Virus record (IMG/VR): IMGVR_UViG_3300010430_000003
Location: 62,001-126,000 of that record
Length of the DNA: 64,000 nucleotides
Reading direction: 5' to 3' (one strand)
Every line of letters begins with the position of its first letter. Positions within the stretch are counted from its first letter, which is position 1. This document shows, piece after piece, positions 11,243-57,188 of the stretch. The translations under genes were made by a program, and so were the position numbers. The notes beneath the pieces are model-generated. The model saw only the letters and a program-made list of their open reading frames with translations. It was not told where the DNA came from and did no database searches.

Positions 11243-11620
11243 ATGTCTGAAAAAAGCAACTGGTGGGAAACAGAGATGCTCAATCTTATGTTTCTCACGT
11301 ACGATCCAGTTTATGTAGCACTTTTTACAACTAATCCTGATGAAGATGCCTCTGGCACAGAAGCAACTGGTGGTTCATATGCAAGAGAATCTGTTGCAGC
11401 TTCTGTTTTTGTTGTTTTAACAGGATCTGCTGCTAATAATACAAATATTGAATTTACAGAAGCAACTGGCAACTGGGGCACTCTTTCTCATGCAGCCATC
11501 TTCACTTCTGCTTCTGGTGGAGATATGTTATATTACAGTCCGCTAGGAACATCAGTTGGAATTAACACAGGGCAAATCTTTAGAATTAACTCTGGCAGCT
11601 TGATTATATCGGAGGATTAA
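11243..11620 (+). CDS. small virion protein (tail-fibre-associated family), paralog 1
   Basis: YVALFTTNP...E.TGGSYAR...F.EATGNWGT.SH.AI...SGG.ML. Confidence 0.7.
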   Translation: MSEKSNWWETEMLNLMFLTYDPVYVALFTTNPDEDASGTEATGGSYARESVAASVFVVLTGSAANNTNIEFTEATGNWGTLSHAAIFTSASGGDMLYYSPLGTSVGINTGQIFRINSGSLIISED

Positions 11621-11622
11621 TT

Positions 11623-12000
11623 ATGAGTGAAAAGGGTGATTATTTAGAAAATTGGGTTTTGTTACAAGTTCTTAGTTCTTTTGATCCATTGTATATTGCA
11701 CTCTTTTCAGATAACCCTGATGAAGACGGATCAGGTACTGAATTTACTGGCGATAATTATGATCGAGCAACAGTTCCCTCTGGAACCCTTACAGTAACAA
11801 ACAATACAGCTTCTAATGCCGCAGTAATTCAGTTTTCAGAATCAACTGCAATTTGGGGCACAGCTTCCCATGTTGCAATTTATGATTCTTTGGCTGGTGG
11901 GAATCTTCTTTATTACAGTGCTCTTAATACCCCGGTAGAGATAGGTTTGTCGCAAGTTTTCCGCTTCGCGACATCTTCGTTAAATATCGTAGAAGATTAA
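11623..12000 (+). CDS. small virion protein, paralog 2
   Basis: Same length (125 aa) and colinear with 11243-11620. Confidence 0.7.
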   Translation: MSEKGDYLENWVLLQVLSSFDPLYIALFSDNPDEDGSGTEFTGDNYDRATVPSGTLTVTNNTASNAAVIQFSESTAIWGTASHVAIYDSLAGGNLLYYSALNTPVEIGLSQVFRFATSSLNIVED

Positions 12001-12087
12001 TTTTATAAATTAACAAAAAAGTGTTGTTGGATATTAAAGAATCTATTTAATATGAAAGTTTTTTCATTTTGAATGGAGATTATTTTA

Positions 12088-17178: not shown

Positions 17179-19380
17179 ATGGCAACAAAAGAAGAAATTG
17201 CACAAATGGTTAATGAGGCGATTGCTGAGTCTCTAGAAGAGCAAAACCAATCCCTCAAAGAACAAAACGAAATTTATCAAGAGAAGCTCAATTCTATTGA
17301 TGAAATTGTTAAGGCTGAAGAACGTCGCCGTGAACTTCTTGAGAAAGAGTGGGAACTATCTGAAAAAATGGCTACTGCTTCTAAAAAGCAGAAAAGAACC
17401 ATTGATGAAAGGATAACTGCTCATAAAGAAGAACGAGAAGAAATAGAAAAAACTTATGGGGTAAGGCAAGATAAAGAGTATGAAGCTCTTAAGTCTTATC
17501 GAAAGTCAATTGAAGTTGGCAAGCGTTCGATGTCTGAACTTCTTGCGAAAATTGGCATTAATAACGAGTGGGATGATTCATTTTTTGGTAAGATGGAACA
17601 TGCCATGCGGCAGGGAAACCTAAGAGGACATCTAGCTGGATTTGGGGATGAGTTAGCAGAACTTCCACAGAAGGTTGGCGGCTCAATGATGATGAAAGCT
17701 TATCGAGAAACGATAAGTCTTGCTAAAGCTCAAGATACTGCCACATCAGCACTTTCAAAAGCAACAGGTGCCGGTGATAAATATGATCAAACAATTCAAG
17801 ATGTCTATATGTCAAATAGACGGTTTGGTGCCTCTTTTGATGATGCCAATAATGCAATATCATCAATGTATTCTCAAGTGCCAAAATTTGATACTATCTC
17901 ACAAGGCACAAGAGACAGTTTAGCTGAAACTTCAATTCTGCTCGAAAAGTTGGGGGTGTCAGGTGATACATCTGCTGGTATCGTATCTCACATGACGACG
18001 ACAATGGCACTCTCAGCAGACCAAGCCATTAAGTACACAAAGGAGCTTGCTGGGCTGTCTGGTGCTGGTATGGATCTCCAGAAGGTATATGGAGATTATA
18101 TGCAAGTTGCCAATCGTCTTGCAACATATACTGGTCCTAAATCAATTGAAGTCTTTCAAAAGTTGGGAAAGGTTGCTAAGGCCACAGCTAGTGATGTTAG
18201 TACATTGTTAGATGTTGCAGAACAATTTGATACTTTTGATCGAGCGGCGGAAGTGGCAGGTCGTTTTAATGCGCTTTTAGGTGGCAATTTCATTGATCCA
18301 ACAGCTTTAGTTAATATGGAAGATATGGGTGATCGCATCAACTATATTGTTGGGTTGAGGGACAAAGCTGGCGTGATGTGGGAGACACTCAGCCGCTATG
18401 AAAGGTTATCTCTTGCTAGTTCTCTTGGCATGGAAGTTGATCAGCTAGGAAAACTATGGACAATGTCTCGTGGTGAAATGGAGGCAAGTGCCGAAGCTGC
18501 TGAGAAACTTGAAAAGAGAGCGCAAGCTGCTGTATCTGTGCAAGAAAAATGGACATCGGTGCAACAGACATTTGCTATTGCAATGGGGCCTGCCATTGAT
18601 TTGCTTGCTAAGGCTTCTGAGTGGTATCTGCAATTAGATAAGGATACACAGGAGCTTATAGGAGGCACCACAGCGCTTGGTATTGGTATTGCTGCACTGG
18701 CAGCCCCGATTGTTAAGATGACCACCACATTGGCTGCTGTGGCTATTCAAGCGGGAGCAACAGTTACTGCCAATACTGCCATTGCTGCTTCTTCTGGGCC
18801 TGCTGCTGCTGGTATTACCACTATCGGCTCTGCCGCAAATAAAGCTGGTCCTGGGTTACTCAAATTAAGTGGTTTTGCATTAGCTCTTGGTGGTGCTTTT
18901 GGTTTGGCGGGTGCTGGTATGTATGGGTTTGGTACTGGTGTGTCCAAAATTTTCGATAGCTTGAATGAAGAAAAAGTAGACGCTTTAGGACAATTATTTT
19001 TGAATGTGTCTTCATTCGCCCCACTAGCTATGTTTGCAATTCCCGCTACAATTGGATTCACAGCGGCATTAGCAGGTATGTCAAAGGTGGTAGACGAATT
19101 TGATGCTGGTAAGTTAGCAAGTTTAGCAGAAATGACTTCAAACTTTTCAGATCTTAAGAAAGATAATGTGGAAATTTATACAAGAGCGGTAAGAGAAACA
19201 ACGCAGTTATATAAAGCCGCGAAGGATAGTGGAGTTTCAAATCCTATTCCAAACGTTCAACAACAAGCCTCCTCTCAAAATTATTCTGTTCCTTTTGTTA
19301 TTAAATTAAACGAAAGAGAGTTAAATAATTTTGTTGTGGAGATAGTTAAGGGTGAAGTTGGTATTCTTGCTCGGGATTAA
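17179..19380 (+). CDS. tape measure protein
   Basis: Coiled-coil N-terminus, Ala/Gly-rich helical body with hydrophobic stretches; lies between chaperones and baseplate genes. Confidence 0.75.
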   Translation: MATKEEIAQMVNEAIAESLEEQNQSLKEQNEIYQEKLNSIDEIVKAEERRRELLEKEWELSEKMATASKKQKRTIDERITAHKEEREEIEKTYGVRQDKEYEALKSYRKSIEVGKRSMSELLAKIGINNEWDDSFFGKMEHAMRQGNLRGHLAGFGDELAELPQKVGGSMMMKAYRETISLAKAQDTATSALSKATGAGDKYDQTIQDVYMSNRRFGASFDDANNAISSMYSQVPKFDTISQGTRDSLAETSILLEKLGVSGDTSAGIVSHMTTTMALSADQAIKYTKELAGLSGAGMDLQKVYGDYMQVANRLATYTGPKSIEVFQKLGKVAKATASDVSTLLDVAEQFDTFDRAAEVAGRFNALLGGNFIDPTALVNMEDMGDRINYIVGLRDKAGVMWETLSRYERLSLASSLGMEVDQLGKLWTMSRGEMEASAEAAEKLEKRAQAAVSVQEKWTSVQQTFAIAMGPAIDLLAKASEWYLQLDKDTQELIGGTTALGIGIAALAAPIVKMTTTLAAVAIQAGATVTANTAIAASSGPAAAGITTIGSAANKAGPGLLKLSGFALALGGAFGLAGAGMYGFGTGVSKIFDSLNEEKVDALGQLFLNVSSFAPLAMFAIPATIGFTAALAGMSKVVDEFDAGKLASLAEMTSNFSDLKKDNVEIYTRAVRETTQLYKAAKDSGVSNPIPNVQQQASSQNYSVPFVIKLNERELNNFVVEIVKGEVGILARD

Positions 19381-36780: not shown

Positions 36781-37589
36781 GCGGTAGATTAAAAAAGGGA
36801 CATAATAGATGGAAGAAGTCTAAAACAACGACGAGGAAGAATTATCTTAAGAACATAACTCTTAAGTTTGATTTTTCAAATGTTGTTGTTGGTTCTGACA
36901 TCAACGCTGTTCTATATGCTTTCAAGAGAGATTTACCTCTTTTCATAGAAAAAGACCATTTCTCACTGGAAGAAGAAATACTCAGCAATGAGGACTTGAA
37001 GAAAAATATCCAATTCGAGGATTATGAAAACTTCAAGTCCTCATTGTTGTTTGTAATGAATTTAAACGGACTTGTGTTCGGTTTTGATAGTCTTGATATA
37101 GAAGAAAATATTATTAAAACTGAGTATGATAAGTTTTTCATCAATGAATGTTATTACAGTAAATTAGTAGACCCCTTTAAACCTGAACCTCTTATGTTGG
37201 TGATAGACAAGATCTCTGTAGAACTTCCTAAAACTAAGAAAACTTTATTCCGAAATTTTGAATATCATGGTAATGATAGATTTATCAATAAGATTGTATC
37301 ACACAAGGATGAATTGTATTGTATCTCTTATATGACAGAAAAAGAATTGAGTAATGAAGAGTATTTAATCTTCAATGTAAAATTCAAGGTTCAAGAGATT
37401 TTAGAAAATAATAAAATTAATTATTCTGTTTCAAGTGTTAAGAGATGTTTAGAACAACACAGATCTATGGAAATAGAGTTTGATAACTATTTCAATATAT
37501 CAAACATGTCAGTCTCAGAAATCTTAGAAACTGAAAAAGAAAGTAGAAACATGGAAATGTATGGCAAATTCGGACAAGACATATTCTGA
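36777..37589 (+). CDS. hypothetical protein, degenerate Rossmann-like N-terminus
   Basis: NVVVGSDINAVLYA. Confidence 0.55.
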   Translation: MSGRLKKGHNRWKKSKTTTRKNYLKNITLKFDFSNVVVGSDINAVLYAFKRDLPLFIEKDHFSLEEEILSNEDLKKNIQFEDYENFKSSLLFVMNLNGLVFGFDSLDIEENIIKTEYDKFFINECYYSKLVDPFKPEPLMLVIDKISVELPKTKKTLFRNFEYHGNDRFINKIVSHKDELYCISYMTEKELSNEEYLIFNVKFKVQEILENNKINYSVSSVKRCLEQHRSMEIEFDNYFNISNMSVSEILETEKESRNMEMYGKFGQDIF

Positions 37590-38508
37590 TAAAGATAATT
37601 TTCACTTAGCTGGGATTATTCCCATTCATGGGATGGATGTATGGTTTGGTATGCCTTGGCATTTCACTCTACAACCCATAGCAGAAAACTATACAATGAT
37701 AGAAAACGCAGTCATTGAATGTGCGGCTGCTGGTTGTGAAACCATATGGATTGTTGCTTCTGAGAAGACCTCTCCCATGATTAGGAGAAGGATAGGAGAG
37801 TACATTTTAGATCCCAGTTCATATTTTAGATTTAGAACAGATCTTAACAGGCGGTATGTGACAATTCATTATGTGCCGGTGAAACCAATCGATAGAGATA
37901 GAAGAGATTGCTTACCTTGGTCTACAGTATATGGGTGTTTAGCAGCAGACAAGGTCTGTAGATTTATTTCAAAGTGGACCGCCCCAGATAGATATTATAT
38001 TAGCTACCCATGGGGAGTTAAAAACTATTTTGAGATCATTAAAGACAGAAAGAAGATTTCAAGCCCATCAGTCAGGCGCTATTATACATCTTATGATGAT
38101 AAAGATATAACAAATGGATTGCCTCATTCATTTACTCTCTCGTTAGAAGAAGCAAGAGAGTATAAAGAGAAGATAAGAAAAGAAGGAACGGGAAGGTGGG
38201 ACTGGAGTATACCAAAAGACCAATGGAAAAATAAAACATCTCCCGGCATTGCTCTTCCGAAAGAAGAAGCCTATTCTGGTAGACATTTTACATTAGCGGA
38301 TATATTTTCTAATCTTGAAATTTCGGATGAAAAAGATTATAATAGAGAATTAGAGTGGTTCGAGGATATCGGTACTTGGGAAGGTTATTGTGCTTTCCTT
38401 GGAGATACCACAAAAGAAGTAGTGAAGCCTCACTATGCCCTAGCTCATTATAGAGAATGGAATTACTCCTCATTAAGAATTCAGGATTTCAATAAAGATG
38501 AGTCTTAA
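37561..38508 (+). CDS. GT-A/sugar-phosphate nucleotidyltransferase-like protein
   Basis: LAGIIP...LQPI...MIENAV.E...AGCETIWIV; C-terminal WFEDIGTWEGY. Confidence 0.65.
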   Translation: MANSDKTYSDKDNFHLAGIIPIHGMDVWFGMPWHFTLQPIAENYTMIENAVIECAAAGCETIWIVASEKTSPMIRRRIGEYILDPSSYFRFRTDLNRRYVTIHYVPVKPIDRDRRDCLPWSTVYGCLAADKVCRFISKWTAPDRYYISYPWGVKNYFEIIKDRKKISSPSVRRYYTSYDDKDITNGLPHSFTLSLEEAREYKEKIRKEGTGRWDWSIPKDQWKNKTSPGIALPKEEAYSGRHFTLADIFSNLEISDEKDYNRELEWFEDIGTWEGYCAFLGDTTKEVVKPHYALAHYREWNYSSLRIQDFNKDES

Positions 38509-38767
38509 AGAAGCTTTAAAAAAATATGATTGGATGGTTTCTCGTGAAATAAAAGAACCAAACTTAACGATAAGACAGCATTTTATTGATTCTGTTATCC
38601 CGCCACACGCATGGTTTCTTGGAAAGGGTTATAAGCTTCATGCTCGTCACTGCTACTTGTTCAAGTCTAAATTAAAAAAGCGACAATCTCTTAGTAACAC
38701 CACATCAGTATTAATGGTATGTAACCTTTATTCTTTTCGAACCTTGGTTGAAGAGATAAGAAAATGA
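38498..38767 (+). CDS. hNxxh family, tandem array member 1
   Basis: PNLTIRQHFIDSVIPPHAW. Confidence 0.65.
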   Translation: MSLKEALKKYDWMVSREIKEPNLTIRQHFIDSVIPPHAWFLGKGYKLHARHCYLFKSKLKKRQSLSNTTSVLMVCNLYSFRTLVEEIRK

Positions 38768-39024
38768 CGGAAATCAACCTTCTTATTAATAGACTTTATC
38801 TCGCATCAATTAAGGATATCTATAAATGGGTTTCTCCTGATGGAGCGTTTATTCTTGTTTTTTATGGTCATCTTAATCATAATATGAAAAACATTACAAT
38901 ATCCCAAGAATTATTTGCTGATAGGTTTCCTACTCACTTATTGAAATATATGCTTGAGACTGATCTTAAGCACAGCTTTCATATGCTAACCAACTCTTTA
39001 TTGGATGTAAATGAACACAATTAG
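38764..39024 (+). CDS. hNxxh family, tandem array member 2
   Basis: INLLINRLYLASIKDIYKW. Confidence 0.65.
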   Translation: MTEINLLINRLYLASIKDIYKWVSPDGAFILVFYGHLNHNMKNITISQELFADRFPTHLLKYMLETDLKHSFHMLTNSLLDVNEHN

Positions 39025-39190
39025 TTTAAATTGGTTTATTAGGAAATATTTTGTTGATTCTGTTGCTCCACCTCCTACGTGGGTAACTAACTGTCCTTTT
39101 AGACATAGAGTCTCCGCTTCAAGTCATAGAAGTGTAAGGGTTTATAAACCCCGTGTATTCAGGAGATTTATTCCATATGTTGACTTCTAA
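39011..39190 (+). CDS. hNxxh family, tandem array member 3 (59 aa, absent from the ORF track)
   Basis: Translated by hand: MNTISLNWFIRKYFVDSVAPPPTWVTNCPF...PYVDF*. Confidence 0.65.
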   Translation: MNTISLNWFIRKYFVDSVAPPPTWVTNCPFRHRVSASSHRSVRVYKPRVFRRFIPYVDF

Positions 39191-39446
39191 TATTAATAGA
39201 GAAGTTAAATTATACTTTTTAAGTAGTGTACAGCGTTCTACCACATGGATTAATGGATATAATAAATATTGGGGTTTAGATCATCCTAAAATTTATTATG
39301 TGAGTTATAAATTCTATAGAAGGAAAAGCTGGACGACTGATGAAATTAAAACATTCGACACAGTTAAATCTTTTAACTACACGATTAAAATGCTTGAGAG
39401 AGACAATGGTTCCCGAGATTACTGCAGAGAGACATACATATATTAA
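39177..39446 (+). CDS. hNxxh family, tandem array member 4
   Basis: INREVKLYFLSSVQRSTTW; AGGAG upstream. Confidence 0.65.
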   Translation: MLTSNINREVKLYFLSSVQRSTTWINGYNKYWGLDHPKIYYVSYKFYRRKSWTTDEIKTFDTVKSFNYTIKMLERDNGSRDYCRETYIY

Positions 39447-39660
39447 TTCCGTGGTTAAGACGCATTTTCTAGATTCAATAGAAAATCCATTCAGTTGGTT
39501 TGTGATAAAACCCCCCGGATTTAAGCGAAGATATAAATCCCTAGGGATTTTTCGTACAAGGAATAGCTTTATCATCAGAAAGGCAAGATATTTATTTAGA
39601 ACCTTTAAACCCTATGTTATTGATTCCTTGATTAAACATAAAAACATGGTAGTTCATTGA
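39406..39660 (+). CDS. hNxxh family, tandem array member 5
   Basis: INSVVKTHFLDSIENPFSW; stop overlaps the dnaE start. Confidence 0.6.
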   Translation: MVPEITAERHTYINSVVKTHFLDSIENPFSWFVIKPPGFKRRYKSLGIFRTRNSFIIRKARYLFRTFKPYVIDSLIKHKNMVVH

Positions 39661-42600
39661 AAGAAAAAGATATTAAATTTGTTGGATTGCACCAACATAG
39701 TCACTATAGTGTCTTTGATGGGTTTGGTGCTCCCAACGAAGCAATTGATTTTGCAATTAAAAACGGTTCGAGAGCGCTAGCCCTAACTGATCATGGAACA
39801 ATGGCAGGCTTGGCAGAACAAGTTCTTCATTCTAAAAAATTAGAACGGGAAGGGGTTGATTTTAAACCAATCTATGGCATTGAAGCTTACTATCACCCAT
39901 CCATTAATGATTGGCAAAACCAATACGAAGAGCATAATAGTAAAAGTGGTAAGAAGTCTAAAAAAGATAGAGATGCAGAACAAGGTTCTGTTGTTGTTGA
40001 AGACGAAGACTATGGAGAGGCTCCCGCAGAGGGTCTTAATTTAAATCATCGACGTCACATGGTTCTTTTAGCCAAGAATCAAACAGGATTGAATAATCTG
40101 TTTTCTATGATCTCAAAATCATATACTAGGCCCTATTATTATAGATACCCAAGAATTGATCTGGAACTCCTTAAACAACATCGTGAAGGCATTGTAGCAA
40201 CTTCTGCGTGCATTGGCGGGTTACTAGGGTTAGATTACTTCCTTAATAAAGAAGAAGGTGAGGAGGCTGTTAAGAAAGCCATGAGAGGCACTGTAGAATC
40301 CATGATGGATATTTATGGAAGTGACTTTTATGGTGAACTGCAATGGAATGCTCTTGATGCTCAACATGAGATTAACAAGCATATTATTGATCTACATCAT
40401 GAATATGGATTTGAACTAATATCAACAGCCGACGCACACTTTCCATCACCAGAGCATTGGCGAAACAGAGAGCTTTATAAAAGACTTGGTTGGATTGGTA
40501 AAAAGGATAAAGTATCTGACATTCCTGATTCTATAGAAGATATGGAATATCAATTGTATCCCAAAAACGGGAATCAAATGTGGGAATCATATAAGAAGTA
40601 TTCCGAAAAGTTTGGTCACTCTTATGATGATAAACTTATTCTTGACTCTATTGAGAGAACACACGATATCTCCTTTAACAAGGTCGAAAAGTTCTATCCA
40701 GATAATTCAATCAAGCTTCCCTCATTCATTTCGGATGTTGATGATTATGATGCAGAATTAAGAAAGATTGCCACTCAAGAATTAGTTAAGAGAGGATTAA
40801 GCAACAATAAAGAATATGTTGAACGAGTAGAAAAAGAGTTGGCTGTTATTATCAAGAAAGGATTCTCTAGATATTTCATTACCACAGAAACAATGGTGAA
40901 TATTGCAAGAGAGCTAATGCTTATTGGTGGTGGTCGAGGTTCTGGTGGTGGAAGTCTTGTAGCATATTTATTGGGAATCACAGAAATAGATCCGCTGAGA
41001 TGGAATCTCCAGTTTGAGAGGTTCTTAAGGGAAGATGATGATGCATACCCTGATATCGATGTAGATATTGAAGACCCTATGATTCTAAAAGAGCATCTTG
41101 CTGAATTGTGGGGAGAAGATTCAGTGGCCCCTGTATCAAATTGGGTTACAATGAAATTTAAGTCTGCCATTAAGGATGTTGCGAAGTTGTATGAAGTTCC
41201 TTATGGAGAAGTTAATGATGTCACAACCAAGATGATGGACGAAGCTATACCTAGAGCTAAGGCAGCAGCAGGTCAATCTTCTGGTGTTTATGATCCATCA
41301 TTTGATGAGTGCAAACAATATAGTCCTACATTTGCTGAATTCCTAGAAAAGTATCCAGATCTAGAGCATCCAATTAGATCTATGCAGGGAACAATTAAAT
41401 CCCTCTCTAGACATGCAGGGGGATTGATTGTTGCAGATAATCTAAGCTCTCAAATTCCACTGATAAGATCATCTGATATTATGCAAACCCCTTGGAAGAA
41501 AGATCTATTGGAACCAATGGGTTTTATCAAATTTGATTTGCTTGGCCTTGATACACTCAAAATGTTTCATGAGTGTATAGAAAGAATTTTGCGATTAGAG
41601 AAAGGTATTAAGAAGCCCACTTTCGAACAAATTAGAGGTTGGTATGAAGAAAATCTCTCCCCTGACAATATTAATCTACAGGACTCTAAGGTTTGGGAGG
41701 TCTTCAAAAAAGGTAATTGGCTAGGCACATTTCAATTTACTGGTAATGGTGCACAAAGATTCTGTAAGTCAATCGAGCCAGATGATTTGATTACACTAGC
41801 GATCATTACATCTATCTTTAGACCGGGTCCATTAGAAGCAGGTGTTCATAAAGATTACGTTGAAGCACTCAACAATCCCAACAGCATTCACTACTTGAAT
41901 GATATACATAGAGAGGTTGCTGGTTCAACGCTAGGCTTTCTCGTGTTTCAAGAGCAGATTGCAGAGCTTGCTCACAAGTTGGGGAAAAACATTTCCCTCG
42001 ATGAAGGAAACTATCTCCGAAAACTGCTAACAAAAAGAAACTCAAATAAAGAGAAAGTGGAAGTCTTTAGAGAAAAGTTTGTTGAGGGTTGTCTTGAGAA
42101 AGATATTTCGCAAGATGATGCTGAAGAACTCTTCCGCAAGTTTGAATACTTTTCAGGATATGGTTTTAACAAAAGCCATGCAGTGGCATATGGGATTATT
42201 TCATATCAATGCGCTTATTTGTGGACTTATTATCCTATTTATTGGGCCACGGCATTCTTGGAAACAACAGATAAGAAGAAGTTAGACGGGGCTATTGCAG
42301 AAGTGCGGTCATACGGCATTGAAATTGAAACCCCTAATATCAACAAGTCCTCGAAGAGATGGGAAGTGGGAGAAGATAAAAGATTATACCAACCACTAAC
42401 ATCAATTAATGGAATTGCCGATGCCTTTTATGCACAGGTTGAACCTCACAGGCCATTCTATTCAATCGAAGAAATGCTCTTTCACGAAGAAATGAAGACT
42501 CCTAATAAAAGTGCATTGTCTGCTCTTATTAGAGCACAGGCACTAAATGATTTAATGGATGAAAGGTTTACAGGTCTCAAGCACTTCTGGTCTGCAGTTG

Positions 42601-43064
42601 CGGTAGATAAGCCAAAAACAGAAGAGAAATTACTTGAAAATATTGAGAACCCTGTTTATAGAGAAGAAGGAGACTTCACAAGAGAGGAAAAGATAATACT
42701 TAAGGCAGATCTAACCAAAATGTTTCCACTCAGAGATATTGTCAGCCAGAAGGCAGAGAACATCATGAGGAAATATGATACATACCCAGTATCTGAATGG
42801 CAGGGCATGCAATACAAATATTGGTTCGTGGTTAGAAATTGTATTGAGAAAAAGGACAGACGAAAACGACCCTATTGGATTTTAGAAGTAATGGATTCAT
42901 CATTCAAGATGCAAAAAATTAAGTGTTGGGGTATAAAAGCACAAGAGGATATGATTATGAAAAATCGTCTATATGTAGCTGATCACATTGAATATGATGA
43001 GAAGTGGGGTTATTCGACAGGATGGAAGAATCCACCAAGGAAAAATTTCAAGTTGGTATCATGA
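39657..43064 (+). CDS. dnaE: DNA polymerase III alpha subunit
   Basis: PHP domain (LHQHSHYS..DG, LTDHG), GRGSGGGSL, PDIDVD, RHAGG, KFDLLGL, GFNKSHAVAY. Confidence 0.97.
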   Translation: MKEKDIKFVGLHQHSHYSVFDGFGAPNEAIDFAIKNGSRALALTDHGTMAGLAEQVLHSKKLEREGVDFKPIYGIEAYYHPSINDWQNQYEEHNSKSGKKSKKDRDAEQGSVVVEDEDYGEAPAEGLNLNHRRHMVLLAKNQTGLNNLFSMISKSYTRPYYYRYPRIDLELLKQHREGIVATSACIGGLLGLDYFLNKEEGEEAVKKAMRGTVESMMDIYGSDFYGELQWNALDAQHEINKHIIDLHHEYGFELISTADAHFPSPEHWRNRELYKRLGWIGKKDKVSDIPDSIEDMEYQLYPKNGNQMWESYKKYSEKFGHSYDDKLILDSIERTHDISFNKVEKFYPDNSIKLPSFISDVDDYDAELRKIATQELVKRGLSNNKEYVERVEKELAVIIKKGFSRYFITTETMVNIARELMLIGGGRGSGGGSLVAYLLGITEIDPLRWNLQFERFLREDDDAYPDIDVDIEDPMILKEHLAELWGEDSVAPVSNWVTMKFKSAIKDVAKLYEVPYGEVNDVTTKMMDEAIPRAKAAAGQSSGVYDPSFDECKQYSPTFAEFLEKYPDLEHPIRSMQGTIKSLSRHAGGLIVADNLSSQIPLIRSSDIMQTPWKKDLLEPMGFIKFDLLGLDTLKMFHECIERILRLEKGIKKPTFEQIRGWYEENLSPDNINLQDSKVWEVFKKGNWLGTFQFTGNGAQRFCKSIEPDDLITLAIITSIFRPGPLEAGVHKDYVEALNNPNSIHYLNDIHREVAGSTLGFLVFQEQIAELAHKLGKNISLDEGNYLRKLLTKRNSNKEKVEVFREKFVEGCLEKDISQDDAEELFRKFEYFSGYGFNKSHAVAYGIISYQCAYLWTYYPIYWATAFLETTDKKKLDGAIAEVRSYGIEIETPNINKSSKRWEVGEDKRLYQPLTSINGIADAFYAQVEPHRPFYSIEEMLFHEEMKTPNKSALSALIRAQALNDLMDERFTGLKHFWSAVAVDKPKTEEKLLENIENPVYREEGDFTREEKIILKADLTKMFPLRDIVSQKAENIMRKYDTYPVSEWQGMQYKYWFVVRNCIEKKDRRKRPYWILEVMDSSFKMQKIKCWGIKAQEDMIMKNRLYVADHIEYDEKWGYSTGWKNPPRKNFKLVS

Positions 43065-43261
43065 ATATAAATATAATTATAAGTAAAATGTATGTCTGTT
43101 GTTATGACAGCGGCGATGTCTTGACAATATCAAGAAATGGAATTGGGTACCGAGCATCTAATTATGGCTCTTGGTTTTCTGAAATTTTGAAAGACAACTA
43201 TATTGCTGTAATAGGGATGAGGAAAAAAGATTTTGAAATCAAAACAAAGTTTGAACTATAA
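43061..43261 (+). CDS. small ORF of the hNxxh family
   Basis: MNINIIISKMYV; ATGA overlap with dnaE. Confidence 0.6.
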   Translation: MNINIIISKMYVCCYDSGDVLTISRNGIGYRASNYGSWFSEILKDNYIAVIGMRKKDFEIKTKFEL

Positions 43262-43433
43262 AATAGCTTATACAGTATTAAACAGTATAACTTATCTCTG
43301 GTATGCTATCGATAATGATGACGATTTTACGAGGCGAACTTATTTGCTACATATCAGTACTAGCAACACAATTGTTCCCACGAGGATTTTTAATCAAGAA
43401 GAATTAGAAGTGTTATATTTTAAGGAGAATTAA
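43233..43433 (+). CDS. small ORF of the hNxxh family
   Basis: SLNYKIAYTVLNSI. Confidence 0.55.
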   Translation: MKSKQSLNYKIAYTVLNSITYLWYAIDNDDDFTRRTYLLHISTSNTIVPTRIFNQEELEVLYFKEN

Positions 43434-43888: not shown

Positions 43889-44934
43889 AAAACAAGCTAT
43901 TTGATGAAAACTGTTCATTTTCATATGATGATTTGCTTTTAAAGCCTCAATTGTCTGATATTAAGTCAAGAAGTGAGATTGATATCAGCACACATCTTGG
44001 TTCTTTCAAAAAGAACATTGCTATGGGCATTCCTATTATTGCTTCTCCAATGCAAACAATTTGTGAAGAGGACATGCAAAATGCATTTGCAGAATTTAAT
44101 AGCTTTGGAATCATTCACAGATATTGCTCAATTCCTGAACAAGCGGCTACAATCAAAAAATGCGGCGGTGATAAAATTGCATTTGCAACAGGGGCTACTG
44201 GTGATTATATGGAAAGAGCGATTGAAGGAGTAAAAGCAGGGGCAAACATCATTTGTGTAGATGTTGCCAATGGTTATAATACAATGATCAAAGAAGCAAT
44301 CAGAAATATTAAGATTGAATTTGGAGATGATGTTTTTATAATTGGTGGCAATGTTGCTTGTTCTGATGGATTCAATTTCTTAGCAGATCTTGGATTATCA
44401 GGAATTAGAGTTGGTGTTGGCGGTGGAAGCATTTGTGCCACTCGCATCCAAACAGGTCATGGCATGGGGACAGCAGCATCTTTATATGATATTGCAAACA
44501 ACAAAAAAGGACATAGTTGTACTGTCATTGCTGATGGTGGAATTCGTTATTCCGGAGATATTGTGAAAGCGTTAGCTCTTGGGGCTGACTCTGTTATAGT
44601 TGGTTCTTTTATAGCAGGTACCATTGAAACTCCGGGTAGTATATTTGAGCATGAAGGAAGGAAGGTTAAAAAGTATGAGGGGATGGCTTCTAAGGCTGCC
44701 CAAGAGGGCTTTTTAGGATATTCTAAGTCAGTTGAGGGTGTCTCTACAGTGGTGGGCAGCAGAGGTAGCGTGATTGATACGTTAAACTTCACATCGATGG
44801 AGATTAAGTCAGGACTATCTTATACAGGAGCCAAGACGCTCTCCCAGTTGAGGTATAAAGCTAAATTTATGGTTCAAACAGAGGTATCGAGAGTTGAAAG
44901 TAGCCCTCACATTTATATGCAAGATAAACTATGA
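43885..44934 (+). CDS. guaB: IMP dehydrogenase/GMP reductase (no CBS domain)
   Basis: GVGGGSICATR, IADGGIRYSGDIVKAL, YEGMAS, SYTGA. Confidence 0.85.
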   Translation: MKNKLFDENCSFSYDDLLLKPQLSDIKSRSEIDISTHLGSFKKNIAMGIPIIASPMQTICEEDMQNAFAEFNSFGIIHRYCSIPEQAATIKKCGGDKIAFATGATGDYMERAIEGVKAGANIICVDVANGYNTMIKEAIRNIKIEFGDDVFIIGGNVACSDGFNFLADLGLSGIRVGVGGGSICATRIQTGHGMGTAASLYDIANNKKGHSCTVIADGGIRYSGDIVKALALGADSVIVGSFIAGTIETPGSIFEHEGRKVKKYEGMASKAAQEGFLGYSKSVEGVSTVVGSRGSVIDTLNFTSMEIKSGLSYTGAKTLSQLRYKAKFMVQTEVSRVESSPHIYMQDKL

Positions 44935-45119
44935 GCAGCAAATACATTAACTTTGTGTTAAGCAGGAATTATTGGTTAGGAACACCGTTTGCAGAACATC
45001 TTTGTACAGGGTGTAGGGTCATCGTAGTTAAAACTAGCATGAGTTCAGTGAGAGGTAATGTCTTTAAGATTAAATGGATTAAGGAAGACTTAAGTAGCAT
45101 GAGAAGACACAATGGATGA
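44931..45119 (+). CDS. small ORF of the hNxxh family
   Basis: YINFVLSRNYWL; ATGA overlap. Confidence 0.55.
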   Translation: MSSKYINFVLSRNYWLGTPFAEHLCTGCRVIVVKTSMSSVRGNVFKIKWIKEDLSSMRRHNG

Positions 45120-52127: not shown

Positions 52128-52375
52128 ATTTAAACATAATGATAGCAAGAGGTATCATTCATGATAAAACCAAGAACTTGTTGGGCTCCGATCCGTTAAG
52201 CTTTGAACTGAGAACATCGCTGCACACCGCAAGGAGAATAAGAAGTATCAAGGATGGTTGGGAGGTTAGCAACCCTTTTCCTTTATTGATCGCCTTGGAA
52301 GAAATAGATGAAACTGGACTCTTGAAAGTAAGCATAACAACTTTTATTGATAGAAGGCTATATGAAGAAATATAA
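52124..52375 (+). CDS. small ORF of the hNxxh family
   Basis: MNLNIMIARGII; ATGA overlap. Confidence 0.6.
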   Translation: MNLNIMIARGIIHDKTKNLLGSDPLSFELRTSLHTARRIRSIKDGWEVSNPFPLLIALEEIDETGLLKVSITTFIDRRLYEEI

Positions 52376-53969
52376 AACAGGAAATGAATTACTATTATCT
52401 CTCTTGGAAGGTTCGAGGAAGCTTGAGGAGAATGTCGCTTGCACTCTTGGACCGAGAGGCAACAATGTCATTTTAAGACCCTTGGGTAGTAATCCAATTA
52501 TCACTAAGGATGGTGTTACTGTTGCTAAGTTCACTGATCTTGAGGATGAGATTGAAGACTTGGCTTGTCAAATTCTTAAACAAGCTTCAATTGAAACAGT
52601 TAAAGAAGCTGGAGACGGAACAACAACCTCCACAGTTTTGGCGAATGCTATATTTACAGAGTCCTCTAAGTATATTCTTAGCGGGGTTACTCCTATCTCT
52701 CTTAAGCGAGGGATGGATAAAGCGGTCCGGAGAATCAATTGCGAGATTGAAAAGAGAGCAACTCCGATATCAACAAAAGAAGATATAAAGAGTATTGCAA
52801 CAATATCATCTAATAACGATGCAGATATTGGTGATTTAATTGCTAATGCTGTGGATGGTATTGGCCGTGATGGTTCTATTGTGGTGGAAGATGGAAAGAG
52901 CACCCAAACAGTTCTTGAGTTTGTTGAAGGTTTAAGGCTACAGGGTGGTTTTCAATCACATCATTTTGCCAATGATAATATTAGAAATGTTGTATCATAC
53001 AAGGATCCTTATTTTCTGATTACAGACCATGTAATTGATGATTTGGAAGAACAACTGCTTCCCGTACTTCAACTTGTACTAAGAGATAAAAAGCCTCTAA
53101 TCATTATTGCTGATGGTTATGGCGAAGAAGTAAGTGCTGCTTGTATCTACAACGCTCTTCAGTCTAGAAAGAATTTGAATAACGCTGTAAAAGTAGCTTG
53201 CTTAAAGGCTCCATCTTTTGGAGAAGAGAGAACTAAGGTTCTTGAGGATGTTGCTATTTCTGTGGGAGCTAAGTTCTTCAGTATGTTTGCTGGTGATAAT
53301 ATTGCTGATGCTAAATTAATTGATTTGGGGGGTGCTGAAAAGCTTGAGGCTAATGGTTACTTCACAACTATTATTGGCGGTATGGGTGAACCAGAAAGGA
53401 TTGAAGAAAGGATTGATGCTCTAAAGGAAGAAATTGATAACGCCCCCGTTAACGAAGGGGCTAGAATTCAAGAAAGAATTACACGGCTTGGCTCTGTTGT
53501 TGCTATCATTAAGGTTGGTGGTCACACTGATGTAGAAGTCGGTGAGATTAAAGATAGAGTTAATGACGCGCTTGAAGCCGTCAATTCAGCTAGGATTGAA
53601 GGGGTGGTAGCAGGAGGAGGTAGCACTCTTCTTAATATTGCTCTTAGGCTCGAAGAAGAAAGATATGAAGAGTCTGATCTCTTTAATGAAGAAGAAAAGA
53701 TAGGGGTGAGAATTTTATTAGAGAGCATTAAGTCTCCGTTTAAAAGAATCGCTCTTAACTCTGGTTTTTCATGGGAGGTTCTAGTAAATAAAGTCAAAGA
53801 GCAAGAAGGAGAAATGGGTGTAGATTTCGTCACAGGAGAGCTTAAAGACTTAAAGGAAGAGGGAATTATTGACCCCGCTAAAGTCACTAGAGTTGCTCTG
53901 CAAAACGCGATATCAGCAGCCTCAACACTTATTACAACAAATAATGCTATTGTCGAAATTCCTCACTAA
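52362..53969 (+). CDS. groEL: chaperonin GroEL-like protein
   Basis: TLGPRG, ITKDGVTVA, AGDGTTTSTVLA, GVVAGGG, IIDPAKV. Confidence 0.96.
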   Translation: MKKYKTGNELLLSLLEGSRKLEENVACTLGPRGNNVILRPLGSNPIITKDGVTVAKFTDLEDEIEDLACQILKQASIETVKEAGDGTTTSTVLANAIFTESSKYILSGVTPISLKRGMDKAVRRINCEIEKRATPISTKEDIKSIATISSNNDADIGDLIANAVDGIGRDGSIVVEDGKSTQTVLEFVEGLRLQGGFQSHHFANDNIRNVVSYKDPYFLITDHVIDDLEEQLLPVLQLVLRDKKPLIIIADGYGEEVSAACIYNALQSRKNLNNAVKVACLKAPSFGEERTKVLEDVAISVGAKFFSMFAGDNIADAKLIDLGGAEKLEANGYFTTIIGGMGEPERIEERIDALKEEIDNAPVNEGARIQERITRLGSVVAIIKVGGHTDVEVGEIKDRVNDALEAVNSARIEGVVAGGGSTLLNIALRLEEERYEESDLFNEEEKIGVRILLESIKSPFKRIALNSGFSWEVLVNKVKEQEGEMGVDFVTGELKDLKEEGIIDPAKVTRVALQNAISAASTLITTNNAIVEIPH

Positions 53970-55899: not shown

Positions 55900-55940
55900 T
55901 AAAAAATTTGCATAGAAAAACTGTGCAAAAAAACTATAAT
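55900..55940 (+). promoter_or_regulatory. early promoter, near-duplicate of 58214-58254
   Basis: TAAAAAATT-N4-TAGAAAAACTGTG-N5-AACTATAAT. Confidence 0.7.
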
Positions 55941-55991
55941 GAGGCTGTTCCAAATTTGTTCCATTAACAACAACAAAAGGATAAAAAACAA

Positions 55992-57188
55992 ATGGCAGAC
56001 CAAGTTTTTCATGAAATCTCTTTCTCGGAATTCACTCGCGTAGCACCGTACATTATTGACGCGGGTTATCCAATCATGCTTCGTGGGAAGCATGGAATTG
56101 GAAAATCAGAATTGGTTTATTGGCTTGCAGAACATCACTGCAAGCTTCCAATTGTTGAGCGGCGAGCTAGTCAAATGGATGTGGGTGACCTTGTTGGTCT
56201 ACCCGTTCTTAAAGATGGGAACACTGGCTTTGCTCCACCGGATTGGTTGGCACGAGCATGTAATGAGCCTGTTGCCCTTTTCCTTGACGAAGTGGATCGT
56301 GCTACATTGGAAGTAGCACAAGGTATTTTCGAACTTTGTGATTCTCGGAAGATCTACGGTAACACACTTCACCCCGGAACTAAGGTCTTTGCTGCTGTTA
56401 ACGGCGGCGCTTCTGGTTCACAATATCAAGTGCGCGAGATGGATCCTGCTGAGCTAGACCGGTGGTCAGTATTTGATGTTCGTCCATCTGTGGATGATTG
56501 GCTTGAGTGGGCTTCCAATTATGGAAAGGTTGAGAACATTGTTCTTGAGTTCCTTGCTGGTAATCGGGAGCATCTTGAGAATATCAACGAACATGACGCA
56601 AGCATTGTTTATCCCTCCCGTCGTTCTTGGGTGCGATTTGATCGCGTGCTTAAGCAGATTAATGATTCCGGGGGTGATTTCTATACCTTCAAGGGTTTGG
56701 AAAACATTGGATCATCCATCATTGGTCTTTCCGCTGCGGTAGCGTTCGGTGAGTTTGTTCGAACTTACAATACTGCTGTTACTTTCGAGGATGTCCTTAA
56801 AGGTAATAAAAAGAAGAAGTGGAAAGACTTGGATTTCGAGCAATACAACATGATTGGTCGTTACCTGAAACATCAAGCTCCGGAAAGCCCTGACTACTGG
56901 CGCACAAACGAAGTCGAACAACCAGAACCAACCTCCAGCGAAATGAACAATGTTCGTGAATTCCTGTTGGAGTGTCCTGACGAAATCCTGATTAACGTGA
57001 CGCGCCTCGCTCACCCAATGGTTTCATCAACCCTCACCTCTCCTCCCCGTACTCTTCGAAACAAAAAGCGCAAGAGTGCTAAGGACAAGAAATCTCTCAA
57101 GCTCATGGAGAGCCTTAAGACCAAAATGCGAGAGGCTTCTGTGTATATGGCCAATAAGGCTGACGAAGAAAAGGCTGAAAAAGAATAA
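55992..57188 (+). CDS. MoxR/AAA_5-type ATPase (second copy)
   Basis: GKHGIGKS, FLDEVDRA, AAVN, MDPAELDRW, PSRRSW. Confidence 0.9.
   Translation: MADQVFHEISFSEFTRVAPYIIDAGYPIMLRGKHGIGKSELVYWLAEHHCKLPIVERRASQMDVGDLVGLPVLKDGNTGFAPPDWLARACNEPVALFLDEVDRATLEVAQGIFELCDSRKIYGNTLHPGTKVFAAVNGGASGSQYQVREMDPAELDRWSVFDVRPSVDDWLEWASNYGKVENIVLEFLAGNREHLENINEHDASIVYPSRRSWVRFDRVLKQINDSGGDFYTFKGLENIGSSIIGLSAAVAFGEFVRTYNTAVTFEDVLKGNKKKKWKDLDFEQYNMIGRYLKHQAPESPDYWRTNEVEQPEPTSSEMNNVREFLLECPDEILINVTRLAHPMVSSTLTSPPRTLRNKKRKSAKDKKSLKLMESLKTKMREASVYMANKADEEKAEKE

What the first reader, a model, noticed from the sequence alone, without database searches (positions are those of the whole stretch)
38498..39660. Five-gene tandem array shows the mini-gene family expanding and diverging
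Five consecutive overlapping ORFs align without gaps over 19 residues: PNLTIRQHFIDSVIPPHAW / INLLINRLYLASIKDIYKW / LNWFIRKYFVDSVAPPPTW / INREVKLYFLSSVQRSTTW / INSVVKTHFLDSIENPFSW. Consensus is N-x2-[IV]-x3-[FY]-h-x-S-[VI]-x5-W; downstream they diverge completely. One member (39011-39190) is missing from the ORF track. This is the strongest internal evidence that the short motif reflects true paralogy, with rapid C-terminal diversification typical of arms-race genes.
Basis: seen in the sequence. Interest (0 to 1): 0.75.

Follow-up and report, generated by a model that had tools for sequence, protein, structure and literature searches.

The report
Fast-evolving mini-gene array beside phage polymerase
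Five tiny overlapping genes wedged between two replication genes of an uncultured 210-kb marine-sediment phage are true, old paralogues of an otherwise unknown protein family that changes 5-10 times faster than its neighbours and varies from 0 to 5 copies among close relatives: a real but fairly ordinary phage "accessory gene" hot spot.

Summary
Five head-to-tail, overlapping + strand ORFs (89, 86, 59, 89 and 84 aa) fill the 1,163 bp between an NTP-transferase-like gene and the DnaE-type DNA polymerase. They share N-x2-[IV]-x3-[FY]-h-x-S-[VI]-x5-W-[FVI], found nowhere else in the 210-kb genome.

- **Protein-level conservation:** Ser is encoded by both TCN and AGT, and the DNA itself does not align.
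- **Statistical support:** m1, m3 and m5 are independently significant (leave-one-out E 1e-6 to 3e-4). m4 joins through its orthologue. m2 is weak (rank 20 of 4,317).
- **Relatives:** A phage with 90% identical flanks has orthologues of m1, m3, m4 and m5 but not m2. Another has only an m1-type gene, and another has an empty slot.
- **Rate:** Array genes are 39-59% identical between orthologues, against 78-90% for flanks (dN 0.32-0.60 vs 0.06-0.16; dN/dS 0.2-0.4).
- **Tails:** They are not wholly unrelated. A second block, h-[KR]-x-R-x-S-h, occurs in four of the five, and the m3 and m5 tails are homologous.
- **Known families:** No Pfam, PHROG, PADLOC or PDB relative was found, and structure models are poor.

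"Expanding" and "arms race" are not shown. Function is inferred only: accessory host-interaction proteins.

The parts
37561..38508 (+). Upstream core gene (315 aa, weak NTP_transferase similarity). It forms the left border of the variable slot.
   Evidence: Pfam PF00483 E 0.0026. 233 relatives in IMG/VR. 90% aa identity to L092.
38315..38343 (+). Sigma-70-like promoter candidate, TTGAAA-17-TATAAT, inside the 3' end of the upstream gene, about 155 nt before m1.
   Evidence: Best match in the 8-kb scan, 11 of 12. Both hexamers are identical in the relative L092. Background identity there is already 83-89%, so the conservation is not significant.
38498..38767 (+). m1, 89 aa, pI 10.0. Motif 1 at 38561-38614, motif 2 (LKKRQSL) at 38672-38692.
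   Evidence: Orthologue r1 (L092 2273-2578) is 39% identical. A diverged orthologue x1 is in L115.
38764..39024 (+). m2, 86 aa, pI 6.3. Motif 1 at 38776-38829, no motif 2. It is the weakest member and has no orthologue in L092. The cassette 38764-39010 is bounded by AAATGA repeats at 38762-38767 and 39009-39014.
   Evidence: (rank 20 of 4,317). It is the only member with core-like codon usage.
39011..39190 (+). m3, 59 aa, pI 11.3. Motif 1 at 39029-39082, motif 2 (FRHRVSA) at 39098-39118, C-terminal PRVFRRFIPYVDF.
   Evidence: Not called on the source contig. Orthologue P0007 is 59 aa and 59% identical. Its tail is homologous to the m5 tail.
39177..39446 (+). m4, 89 aa, pI 9.5, 20% aromatic residues. 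Motif 1 at 39195-39248, motif 2 (FYRRKSW) at 39312-39332.
   Evidence: Orthologue P0008 (94 aa) is 39% identical.
39406..39660 (+). m5, 84 aa, pI 10.6. Motif 1 at 39445-39498, motif 2 (FRTRNSF) at 39550-39570. Its stop overlaps the TTG start of DnaE (ATTGA).
   Evidence: Orthologue P0009 (76 aa) is 45% identical.
39657..43064 (+). DnaE-type DNA polymerase III alpha (1,135 aa). It forms the right border of the slot.
   Evidence: Pfam PHP, DNA_pol3_alpha, finger and HHH_6 domains. 90% aa identity to L092.

Best explanation
**Shown.** The five ORFs are separate, translated genes of one orphan family of small, soluble, aromatic-rich and mostly basic proteins.
- They sit in a gene-exchange hot spot between two core replication genes of an uncultured T4-like-headed myovirus with a 210-kb genome.
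- Their stops and starts overlap by 4, 14, 14, 41 and 4 nt through to the TTG start of DnaE. They are therefore most likely translated by coupling, as part of the replication operon.
- Family members share three features: an N-terminal Asn-capped amphipathic helix followed by a Pro-rich loop and a Trp (motif 1), usually a basic h-[KR]-x-R-x-S-h patch (motif 2), and a C-terminal helix.
- Four paralogues (m1, m3, m4, m5) predate the split from the nearest relative. Each has been kept open and under its own purifying selection, while changing 5-10 times faster than the neighbouring genes.
- Whole units are gained or lost as start-to-start cassettes.

**Inferred.** The conserved core is a shared fold nucleus or a docking surface for one common partner, and the variable parts give each paralogue a different specificity. 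The proteins would then be dispensable host-interaction factors (host takeover or counter-defence) made early or mid-infection, not replication enzymes.
For: - **Family and significance:**
- **Protein-level conservation:** Ser is TCT/TCA/TCT/AGT/TCA and third positions vary. The DNA units do not align.
- **Real genes:** ORF tiling reached the observed value in 0 of 2,000 shuffles, in both phages. Orthologues have conserved lengths, ends and 14-nt overlaps.
- **Rate:** dN 0.32-0.60 against 0.06-0.16 for six of the seven flanking genes compared, including two adjacent small genes of 86 and 95 aa; the seventh pairing, the small ORF just downstream of DnaE, was only 20% identical (dN 1.08) and may be mispaired or a replaced gene. 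dN/dS is 0.23-0.40. The identity drop is sharp at the borders.
- **Hot spot:** in 80 distant relatives the two flanking genes are either adjacent (17-50 bp) or separated by 0.2-5.7 kb of unrelated cargo. That cargo includes a GIY-YIG endonuclease, DNA methyltransferases and orphan genes.
- **Copy number:** 5, 4, 1 and 0 among relatives with 73-90% identical flanks.
- **Second motif and tail homology:**
- **Physical properties:** pI 9.5-11.3 for four of the five, 12-20% F/W/Y, no membrane segment.
- **Structure hints:** helices are predicted over motif 1 and at the C-terminus.
Against: - Nothing shows what the proteins bind or do. There is no hit in Pfam, PHROGs, PADLOC, PDB or the ESM Atlas.
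- AF2 models are poor (pLDDT 52-54), so a common fold is not demonstrated.
- Codon usage of m1, m3, m4 and m5 is no better than that of spurious ORFs.
- No expression data exist: no RNA run was listed.
- dN/dS below 1, with dS saturated, neither proves nor excludes diversifying selection.
- Net charge is not conserved between orthologues (r1 pI 6.1, r3 pI 8.3).
- m2's membership is statistically weak.
Confidence: 0.6

Rival explanations
1. Replisome or nucleic-acid-binding accessory factors. These would be small basic proteins that bind DNA or RNA, or the DnaE, DnaB or clamp machinery, and tune replication. The conserved N-terminal module would dock on the polymerase they are co-translated with.
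For: The array sits inside the replication module (RNR, DnaB, DnaE) and is translationally coupled to DnaE. Four of five members have pI 9.5-11.3 and share an R-x-R-x-S patch.
Against: Relatives with 73-90% identical polymerases have 0 or 1 copies, and about half of the distant relatives have nothing in the slot, so the proteins are dispensable for replication. Charge is not conserved in orthologues. No known DNA-binding or clamp-binding motif or family was hit.
Confidence: 0.15
2. Virion-packaged internal or ejected proteins. Motif 1 would act like the capsid targeting sequence of T-even internal proteins, loading a varied set of small basic effectors into the head for injection with the DNA.
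For: The pattern matches: tandem, small, mostly basic, rapidly diverging proteins that share little beyond an N-terminal motif. T-even internal proteins are described as a highly diverse set of defence proteins with only a conserved CTS (PMC3012670). The genome encodes a T4-type prohead protease, Peptidase_S77, E 9.5e-31. In 6 of 9 members the motif starts 4-6 residues after Met.
Against: No conserved [LI]-x-E cleavage site follows the motif. This was found by inspecting the nine sequences. The motif is preceded by 13-23 residues in m1, r1 and m5. The array lies in the replication operon, not with the head genes. The shared part is longer than a tag: motif 2 and a C-terminal helix are also shared.
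Confidence: 0.1
3. Decaying or non-functional duplicates. The motif would be the last trace of old tandem copies whose tails are drifting, and the ORFs would have no present function.
For: Codon usage of four members is indistinguishable from that of spurious ORFs. Structure confidence is very low. Whole units are lost in relatives.
Against: All ORFs stay open, with conserved starts, ends and overlaps, in two phages whose DNA is only 45-58% identical here. dN/dS is 0.23-0.40, not about 1. Each orthologue pair keeps its own tail blocks, for example PRVF-RFIPYV-F and CNL-S...EEI-K.
Confidence: 0.05
4. A repeated DNA or RNA element, such as a promoter, terminator or regulatory repeat, that merely translates into similar peptides.
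For: Five regularly spaced copies on one strand (166-253 nt apart).
Against: Each copy lies in the frame of its own ORF, and three different frames are used. The invariant Ser uses both TCN and AGT. Third positions vary. DNA-level alignments of the units are not above shuffles except m1-m3, z 3.9. The peptide motif is conserved in orthologues despite about 50% DNA divergence.
Confidence: 0.02

Closest known systems
Internal proteins (IPI, IPII, IPIII and polymorphic IP loci) of T-even phages, with their N-terminal capsid targeting sequence
   Same: Tandem small, mostly basic, fast-diverging phage genes whose members share little beyond a short N-terminal motif. The host phage has a T4-type prohead protease. 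The literature describes the IPs as a diverse set of anti-restriction proteins with only the CTS conserved (PMC3012670).
   Different: Motif 1 is about 20 residues long and is not always at the extreme N-terminus. It has no protease cleavage consensus and no sequence likeness to the T4 CTS. Members also share a second basic block. The array lies between replication genes. Virion location is untested.
Hyperplastic or plastic-periphery regions of large myovirus genomes (variable cargo between conserved core genes). This comparison rests on my own knowledge of the T4-superfamily literature and was not checked here.
   Same: The slot between the NTP-transferase-like gene and DnaE is empty in many relatives. 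In others it holds unrelated orphan genes, homing endonucleases or methyltransferases.
   Different: Here the cargo is an internally paralogous array rather than a mix of unrelated genes.
Clusters of small anti-defence genes, such as anti-CRISPR or anti-restriction loci (own knowledge)
   Same: Small size, orphan status, rapid turnover, clustering, and presence or absence among close relatives.
   Different: There is no associated HTH regulator and no homology to any described inhibitor. No anti-defence library was available to search; PADLOC holds defence proteins, not counter-defence proteins. Function is untested.
Other tandem mini-gene families in the same genome and its relatives
   Same: The genome has a second array of six or seven paralogous ORFs of roughly 60-100 aa at G000 144913-146987. 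Relative L116 has a trio, y1-y3, in the same slot beginning MTIS(S)SEIN, like r4 and r5.
   Different: Apart from the N-terminal heptad of the L116 trio (p about 1e-3 by my estimate), no similarity to the m family is detectable.

Membership tests
The m-family itself (paralogy of the five ORFs) | Motif 1 similarity above chance when the tested member and its orthologue are left out of the profile | tested here: met
   m1 8e-6, m3 1e-6, m5 3e-4. m4 scores 0.2 (rank 2) but its orthologue r4 has the full consensus. m2 scores 6.5 (rank 20 of 4,317), so its membership rests on position as well.
The m-family itself (paralogy of the five ORFs) | Conservation acts on the protein, not on the DNA | tested here: met
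   Ser is encoded by TCN and AGT, three reading frames are used, and the DNA units do not align.
The m-family itself (paralogy of the five ORFs) | Homology extends beyond the 19-residue motif | tested here: inconclusive
   Motif 2 is in 4 of 5 members (8 of 9 with orthologues). Its background rate is 25 hits in 240,903 residues. The m3 and m5 tails are homologous (hhalign 21.7 vs 9.7 +/- 1.9, 0 of 60). m1 vs m4 is marginal (2 of 60) and the other pairs show nothing.
T-even internal proteins with capsid targeting sequence | Targeting sequence at the extreme N-terminus | tested here: inconclusive
   The motif begins at residue 5-7 in 6 of 9 members, but at 14-24 in m5, m1 and r1.
T-even internal proteins with capsid targeting sequence | Prohead-protease cleavage site ([LI]-x-E) ending the targeting sequence | tested here: not met
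   Inspection of the nine sequences shows no conserved Glu or [LI]-x-E after motif 1. A Peptidase_S77 protease is present in the genome.
T-even internal proteins with capsid targeting sequence | Protein is packaged in the capsid and injected | not testable with these tools
   This needs virion proteomics.
Any curated protein family (Pfam, PHROGs, PADLOC, PDB chains) | Profile match at or near the curated threshold | tested here: not met
   The best hits were E 0.007-0.17, each for a single member and each to a different family.
Diversity-generating retroelement target genes | Reverse transcriptase and template/variable DNA repeats | tested here: not met
   No RVT_1 match in the genome. No DNA-level repeat among the units.

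The most novel reading that the evidence does not exclude
The shared N-terminal helix-loop-Trp module plus the R-x-R-x-S patch is a common docking or delivery handle. It would either load effectors into the capsid through the T4-type head machinery or bind one host hub protein. Each paralogue's variable part would neutralise a different host defence. The array would then be a previously undescribed, modular counter-defence arsenal whose copy number tracks the host's defence repertoire.
Probability: 0.12. Interest if true: 0.6.

Novelty: new member of a known kind. Interest (0 to 1): 0.35.

Why it matters
The array is a clean, quantified example of how large uncultured marine phages keep a fast-turnover accessory locus inside an otherwise conserved replication operon.

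- Units are added or removed as start-to-start cassettes, which preserves translational coupling to the polymerase.
- The family is an orphan. Among 15 billion proteins it was found in only three or four phage lineages.
- If a host were ever identified, the array would be a compact candidate set for host-takeover or counter-defence screens.

By itself it opens no long-standing question. Small, fast-evolving paralogous orphan genes in plastic regions are a familiar feature of large phage genomes.

Tried and rejected
**Searches that found nothing useful**
- DNA similarity to deposited phages: none. The nearest cultured DnaE is only 28-29% identical.
- Profile and word searches of 5.8 and 1.84 billion proteins returned only the window's own proteins, three orthologues from one relative, and three repetitive false positives: P0005, P0006 and P0010.
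- Degenerate DNA pattern scans of IMG/VR and JGI metagenome contigs returned only the same phage plus chance hits. The single IMG/VR match, for example, lies antisense inside a 447-aa ORF that I read by eye as helicase-like and did not check.
- The search for related loci could not use the alignment, because it has no conserved 7-10-mer.
- Five complete related genomes of 185-205 kb and 80 related loci hold no member.
- ESM Atlas look-alikes scored 0.60-0.71, below the noise level, and its stored models have pLDDT 0.34-0.44.
- AF2 with the nine-sequence alignment gave pLDDT 52-54. I ran no fold search because such models give meaningless matches.

**Population and expression data**
- Ten near-identical contigs and four sediment DNA runs are 100% identical across the array at 3-6x depth. 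This gives no microdiversity information, and the contig breaks inside the array reflect low depth.
- No RNA run was listed.

**Ideas tested and dropped**
- Frame-shifted tail homology: the best case was FHMLTNSL in the m2 tail against FHMLTSNI upstream of m4, z 2.9 among 90 comparisons, which is not significant.
- DGR hypothesis: rejected, no reverse transcriptase.
- One broken repeat protein: rejected, because ORF borders and overlaps are conserved in the relative.
Full report
**Setting**

The window is bases 62001-126000 of a 210,326-bp virus record with direct terminal repeats, assembled from a marine sediment metagenome. Nearly all genes lie on the + strand and GC content is about 37%. 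The phage is a myovirus: it has a tail sheath, DnaB helicase, ribonucleotide reductase, a GroEL-like chaperonin and a DnaE-type polymerase. It also has a T4-type prohead protease just outside the window. No cultured phage is close; the best DnaE match is 28-29% identical.

**The observation**

The five ORFs and the five quoted peptides are present as described. Using the nearest ATG starts, which agree with the gene calls on the source contig and with the orthologues, the genes are:

| Gene | Coordinates | Length |
|---|---|---|
| m1 | 38498-38767 | 89 aa |
| m2 | 38764-39024 | 86 aa |
| m3 | 39011-39190 | 59 aa |
| m4 | 39177-39446 | 89 aa |
| m5 | 39406-39660 | 84 aa |

- Consecutive genes overlap by 4, 14, 14 and 41 nt.
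- The m5 stop overlaps the TTG start of DnaE.
- ORFs of at least 55 aa cover 99.7% of the 1,163 bp. In 2,000 shuffles the mean coverage was 3.6% and the maximum 48%.

**Is the motif more than chance, and is it protein or DNA?**

The motif regex occurs five times in the six-frame translation of the window and of the whole genome, only at these sites.

Profiles built without the tested member and without its orthologue gave these results among 4,317 ORFs:

| Member | E-value | Rank |
|---|---|---|
| m1 | 8e-6 | 1 |
| m3 | 1e-6 | 1 |
| m5 | 3e-4 | 1 |
| m4 | 0.2 | 2 |
| m2 | 6.5 | 20 |

- m4 is secured by its orthologue r4 (INLKIRAFFLDSVVTSDQWI).
- m2 is a weak member. Its inclusion rests on p of about 0.005, on its position in the array, and on the N-terminal placement of the match.

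The conservation acts on the protein:
- The copies lie in three different frames, each the frame of its own ORF.
- The invariant Ser is TCT, TCA, TCT, AGT and TCA.
- The DNA units do not align above shuffles, except weakly m1-m3.

**Relatives**

*Distant relatives.* About half of 80 distant relatives (upstream gene about 40% identical) have the NTP-transferase-like gene and DnaE adjacent, with a 17-50 bp gap or an overlap. The rest carry 0.2-5.7 kb of unrelated cargo: orphan small genes, a GIY-YIG/NUMOD3 endonuclease, two N6/N4 DNA methyltransferases and a PLP enzyme. None has the motif family. The slot is therefore a plasticity hot spot.

*The nearest relative.* An exhaustive profile search of 1.84 billion representative proteins found only three outside proteins: P0007, P0008 and P0009. 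All three lie on one contig, L092, whose flanking genes are 78-90% identical to the window's. In the same slot it carries r1 (101 aa), r3 (59 aa), r4 (94 aa) and r5 (76 aa). These are orthologues of m1, m3, m4 and m5. It has no m2.

*The m2 indel.* The m2 difference is an exact start-codon-to-start-codon indel of 247 nt. It is bounded in the window by the repeat AAATGA at 38762-38767 and 39009-39014.

*Closer relatives found through the upstream protein*:

| Locus | Identity to the window | Slot content |
|---|---|---|
| L115 | ntp 90%, DnaE 85% | One 80-aa gene similar to m1 and r1 (z 5.3 and 5.7). It has lost the invariant Asn and Trp. |
| L116 | ntp 76% | A tandem trio of its own paralogues starting MTIS(S)SEIN, like r4 and r5, but otherwise not detectably related. 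|
| L119 | ntp 73% | Empty. |
| L118 | ntp 69% | One unclear 77-aa gene. |

Core-protein identities, and tree distances that leave the fork unresolved, put the window and L092 closest, then L115, with L116 outside.

**Rates**

| | Array genes (orthologues) | Flanking genes |
|---|---|---|
| Amino-acid identity | 39-59% | 78-90% |
| dN | 0.32-0.60 | 0.06-0.16 |
| dN/dS | 0.23-0.40 | 0.02-0.12 |

- The flanking set includes the adjacent 86- and 95-aa genes (83-90% identical), so small size alone does not explain the rate.
- The flanking figures cover six of the seven flanking genes compared. The seventh pairing, the small ORF just downstream of DnaE, was only 20% identical (dN 1.08) and may be mispaired or a replaced gene.
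- pS is similar and saturated everywhere, so the excess change is all non-synonymous.
- Nucleotide identity drops from 80-89% to 45-58% precisely at the array borders.
- Between orthologues, motif 1 (9-13 of 20 identical) is only slightly better kept than the tails (36-56%). Recent evolution is fast along the whole protein, and only a handful of positions persist over the long term.
- Paralogues are much more diverged than orthologues. The four-gene core is therefore older than the split of the two phages, and no recent duplication is visible.

**Anatomy of the proteins**

- *Motif 1.* With the orthologues added, it reads [IL]-N-x2-[IV]-[RK]-x2-F-[LIV]-[DAS]-S-[VI]-x2-[PS]-x2-W-[FVI]. It has hydrophobic residues at i, i+4 and i+8 after a possible Asn N-cap. 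AF2 predicts a helix there in both models, though with low confidence.
- *Motif 2.* The block h-[KR]-x-R-x-S-h is present in 8 of 9 sequences, all except m2. Its background rate in the genome is 25 hits in 240,903 residues.
- *Tails.* Tail-only profile comparison shows that the m3/r3 and m5/r5 tails are homologous (score 21.7 vs 9.7 +/- 1.9). m1 vs m4 is marginal. m3 looks like an m5-type protein with a roughly 14-residue internal deletion and an earlier stop.
- *Composition.* The proteins are aromatic-rich (12-20% F/W/Y) and have no membrane segment. Four of the five have pI 9.5-11.3, but charge is not conserved in the orthologues.
- *Codon usage.* For four members it is atypical and overlaps the range of spurious ORFs. 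I attribute this to composition, gene overlaps and fast evolution, because ORF maintenance in two diverged genomes argues for translation.

**What it is and how it probably works**

*Shown.* This is a real orphan family of small proteins in a variable slot. The genes are arranged for coupled translation with the replication genes. They evolve fast but under net purifying selection, and copy number is labile through cassette-like gain or loss.

*Inferred.* The proteins are dispensable accessory proteins. Motif 1, motif 2 and the C-terminal helix would form a shared scaffold or docking surface, and the variable parts would diversify specificity. The most plausible role is host takeover or counter-defence.

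*Rivals.*
- Replisome or nucleic-acid-binding modulators. The position and basic charge favour this. Dispensability in relatives argues against it.
- T4-style internal proteins loaded into the capsid through an N-terminal tag. The overall pattern and the T4-type protease favour this. The lack of a cleavage consensus, the internal placement of the motif in some members and the genomic position argue against it.
- Decaying duplicates or a DNA repeat. The data contradict both.

**Novelty and interest**

The family is new to the databases, with no Pfam, PHROG, PADLOC, PDB or Atlas relative. The phenomenon, however, is well known in large phages. I file it as a new member of a known kind, with interest 0.35.

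Noticed in passing
window 38762-38767 and 39009-39014: The m2 gene is a precise start-to-start cassette of 247 nt, flanked by the direct repeat AAATGA. It is absent from the nearest relative, L092, where r1 joins directly to r3 with the same 14-nt overlap. This points to unit gain or loss by recombination at the coupled stop/start junctions.
   Followed up: partly
window 39657-39660; L092 3246-3249; L115 6257: DnaE starts with TTG in all three close phages. In the window and in L092 the TTG overlaps the stop of the last array gene (ATTGA), so polymerase translation may depend on coupling to whatever gene occupies the slot.
   Followed up: no
window 38315-38343: A near-consensus sigma-70-like promoter (TTGAAA-17-TATAAT) lies inside the 3' end of the upstream gene. 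Both hexamers are unchanged in L092, but this is not significant against the 83-89% local identity.
   Followed up: partly
window 11243-11620 and 11623-12000: Two adjacent 125-aa paralogues, 47% identical (E 4e-37), lie just upstream of the tail sheath gene (12073-14955). A third, weaker relative is at G000 17547-18509.
   Followed up: no
G000 144913-146987 (outside the window): A second, unrelated tandem array of six or seven paralogous ORFs of roughly 60-100 aa (blastp E 1e-5 to 4e-12 between members). This phage therefore carries more than one mini-gene array.
   Followed up: no
window 43120-43420 and 44916-45100: Two further short stretches where identity to L092 collapses (11-39% per 100 nt, with indels). 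They lie among small ORFs downstream of DnaE and after the IMPDH-like gene, and may be other fast-turnover slots.
   Followed up: no
L038 6863-7087, L049, L052, L059, L069-L076, L003 6881-7072, L033 6621-6845, L079 8402-8590: In many distant relatives the same slot holds a recurring gene of 62-75 aa that looks coiled-coil and ends in ...R-T-x-I-x3-I-D-x4-R-x-L. It has no Pfam match and appears unrelated to the m family.
   Followed up: partly
L116 3257-3910: A relative with a 76% identical upstream gene carries a tandem trio of its own paralogues (y1-y3 z 17) in the slot. They begin MTIS(S)SEIN, the same N-terminal heptad as r4 and r5. This may be a very diverged branch of the same family, or convergence.
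   Followed up: partly
window 52347-53969; G000 55918-56361: The phage encodes a GroEL-like chaperonin (PHROG 5725, E 4.5e-126) and a T4-type prohead protease (Peptidase_S77, E 9.5e-31).
   Followed up: no
window 39276-39575 (- strand): A 99-aa antisense ORF spans m4 and m5. Its codon score is poor (-0.25) and it is probably spurious.
   Followed up: partly
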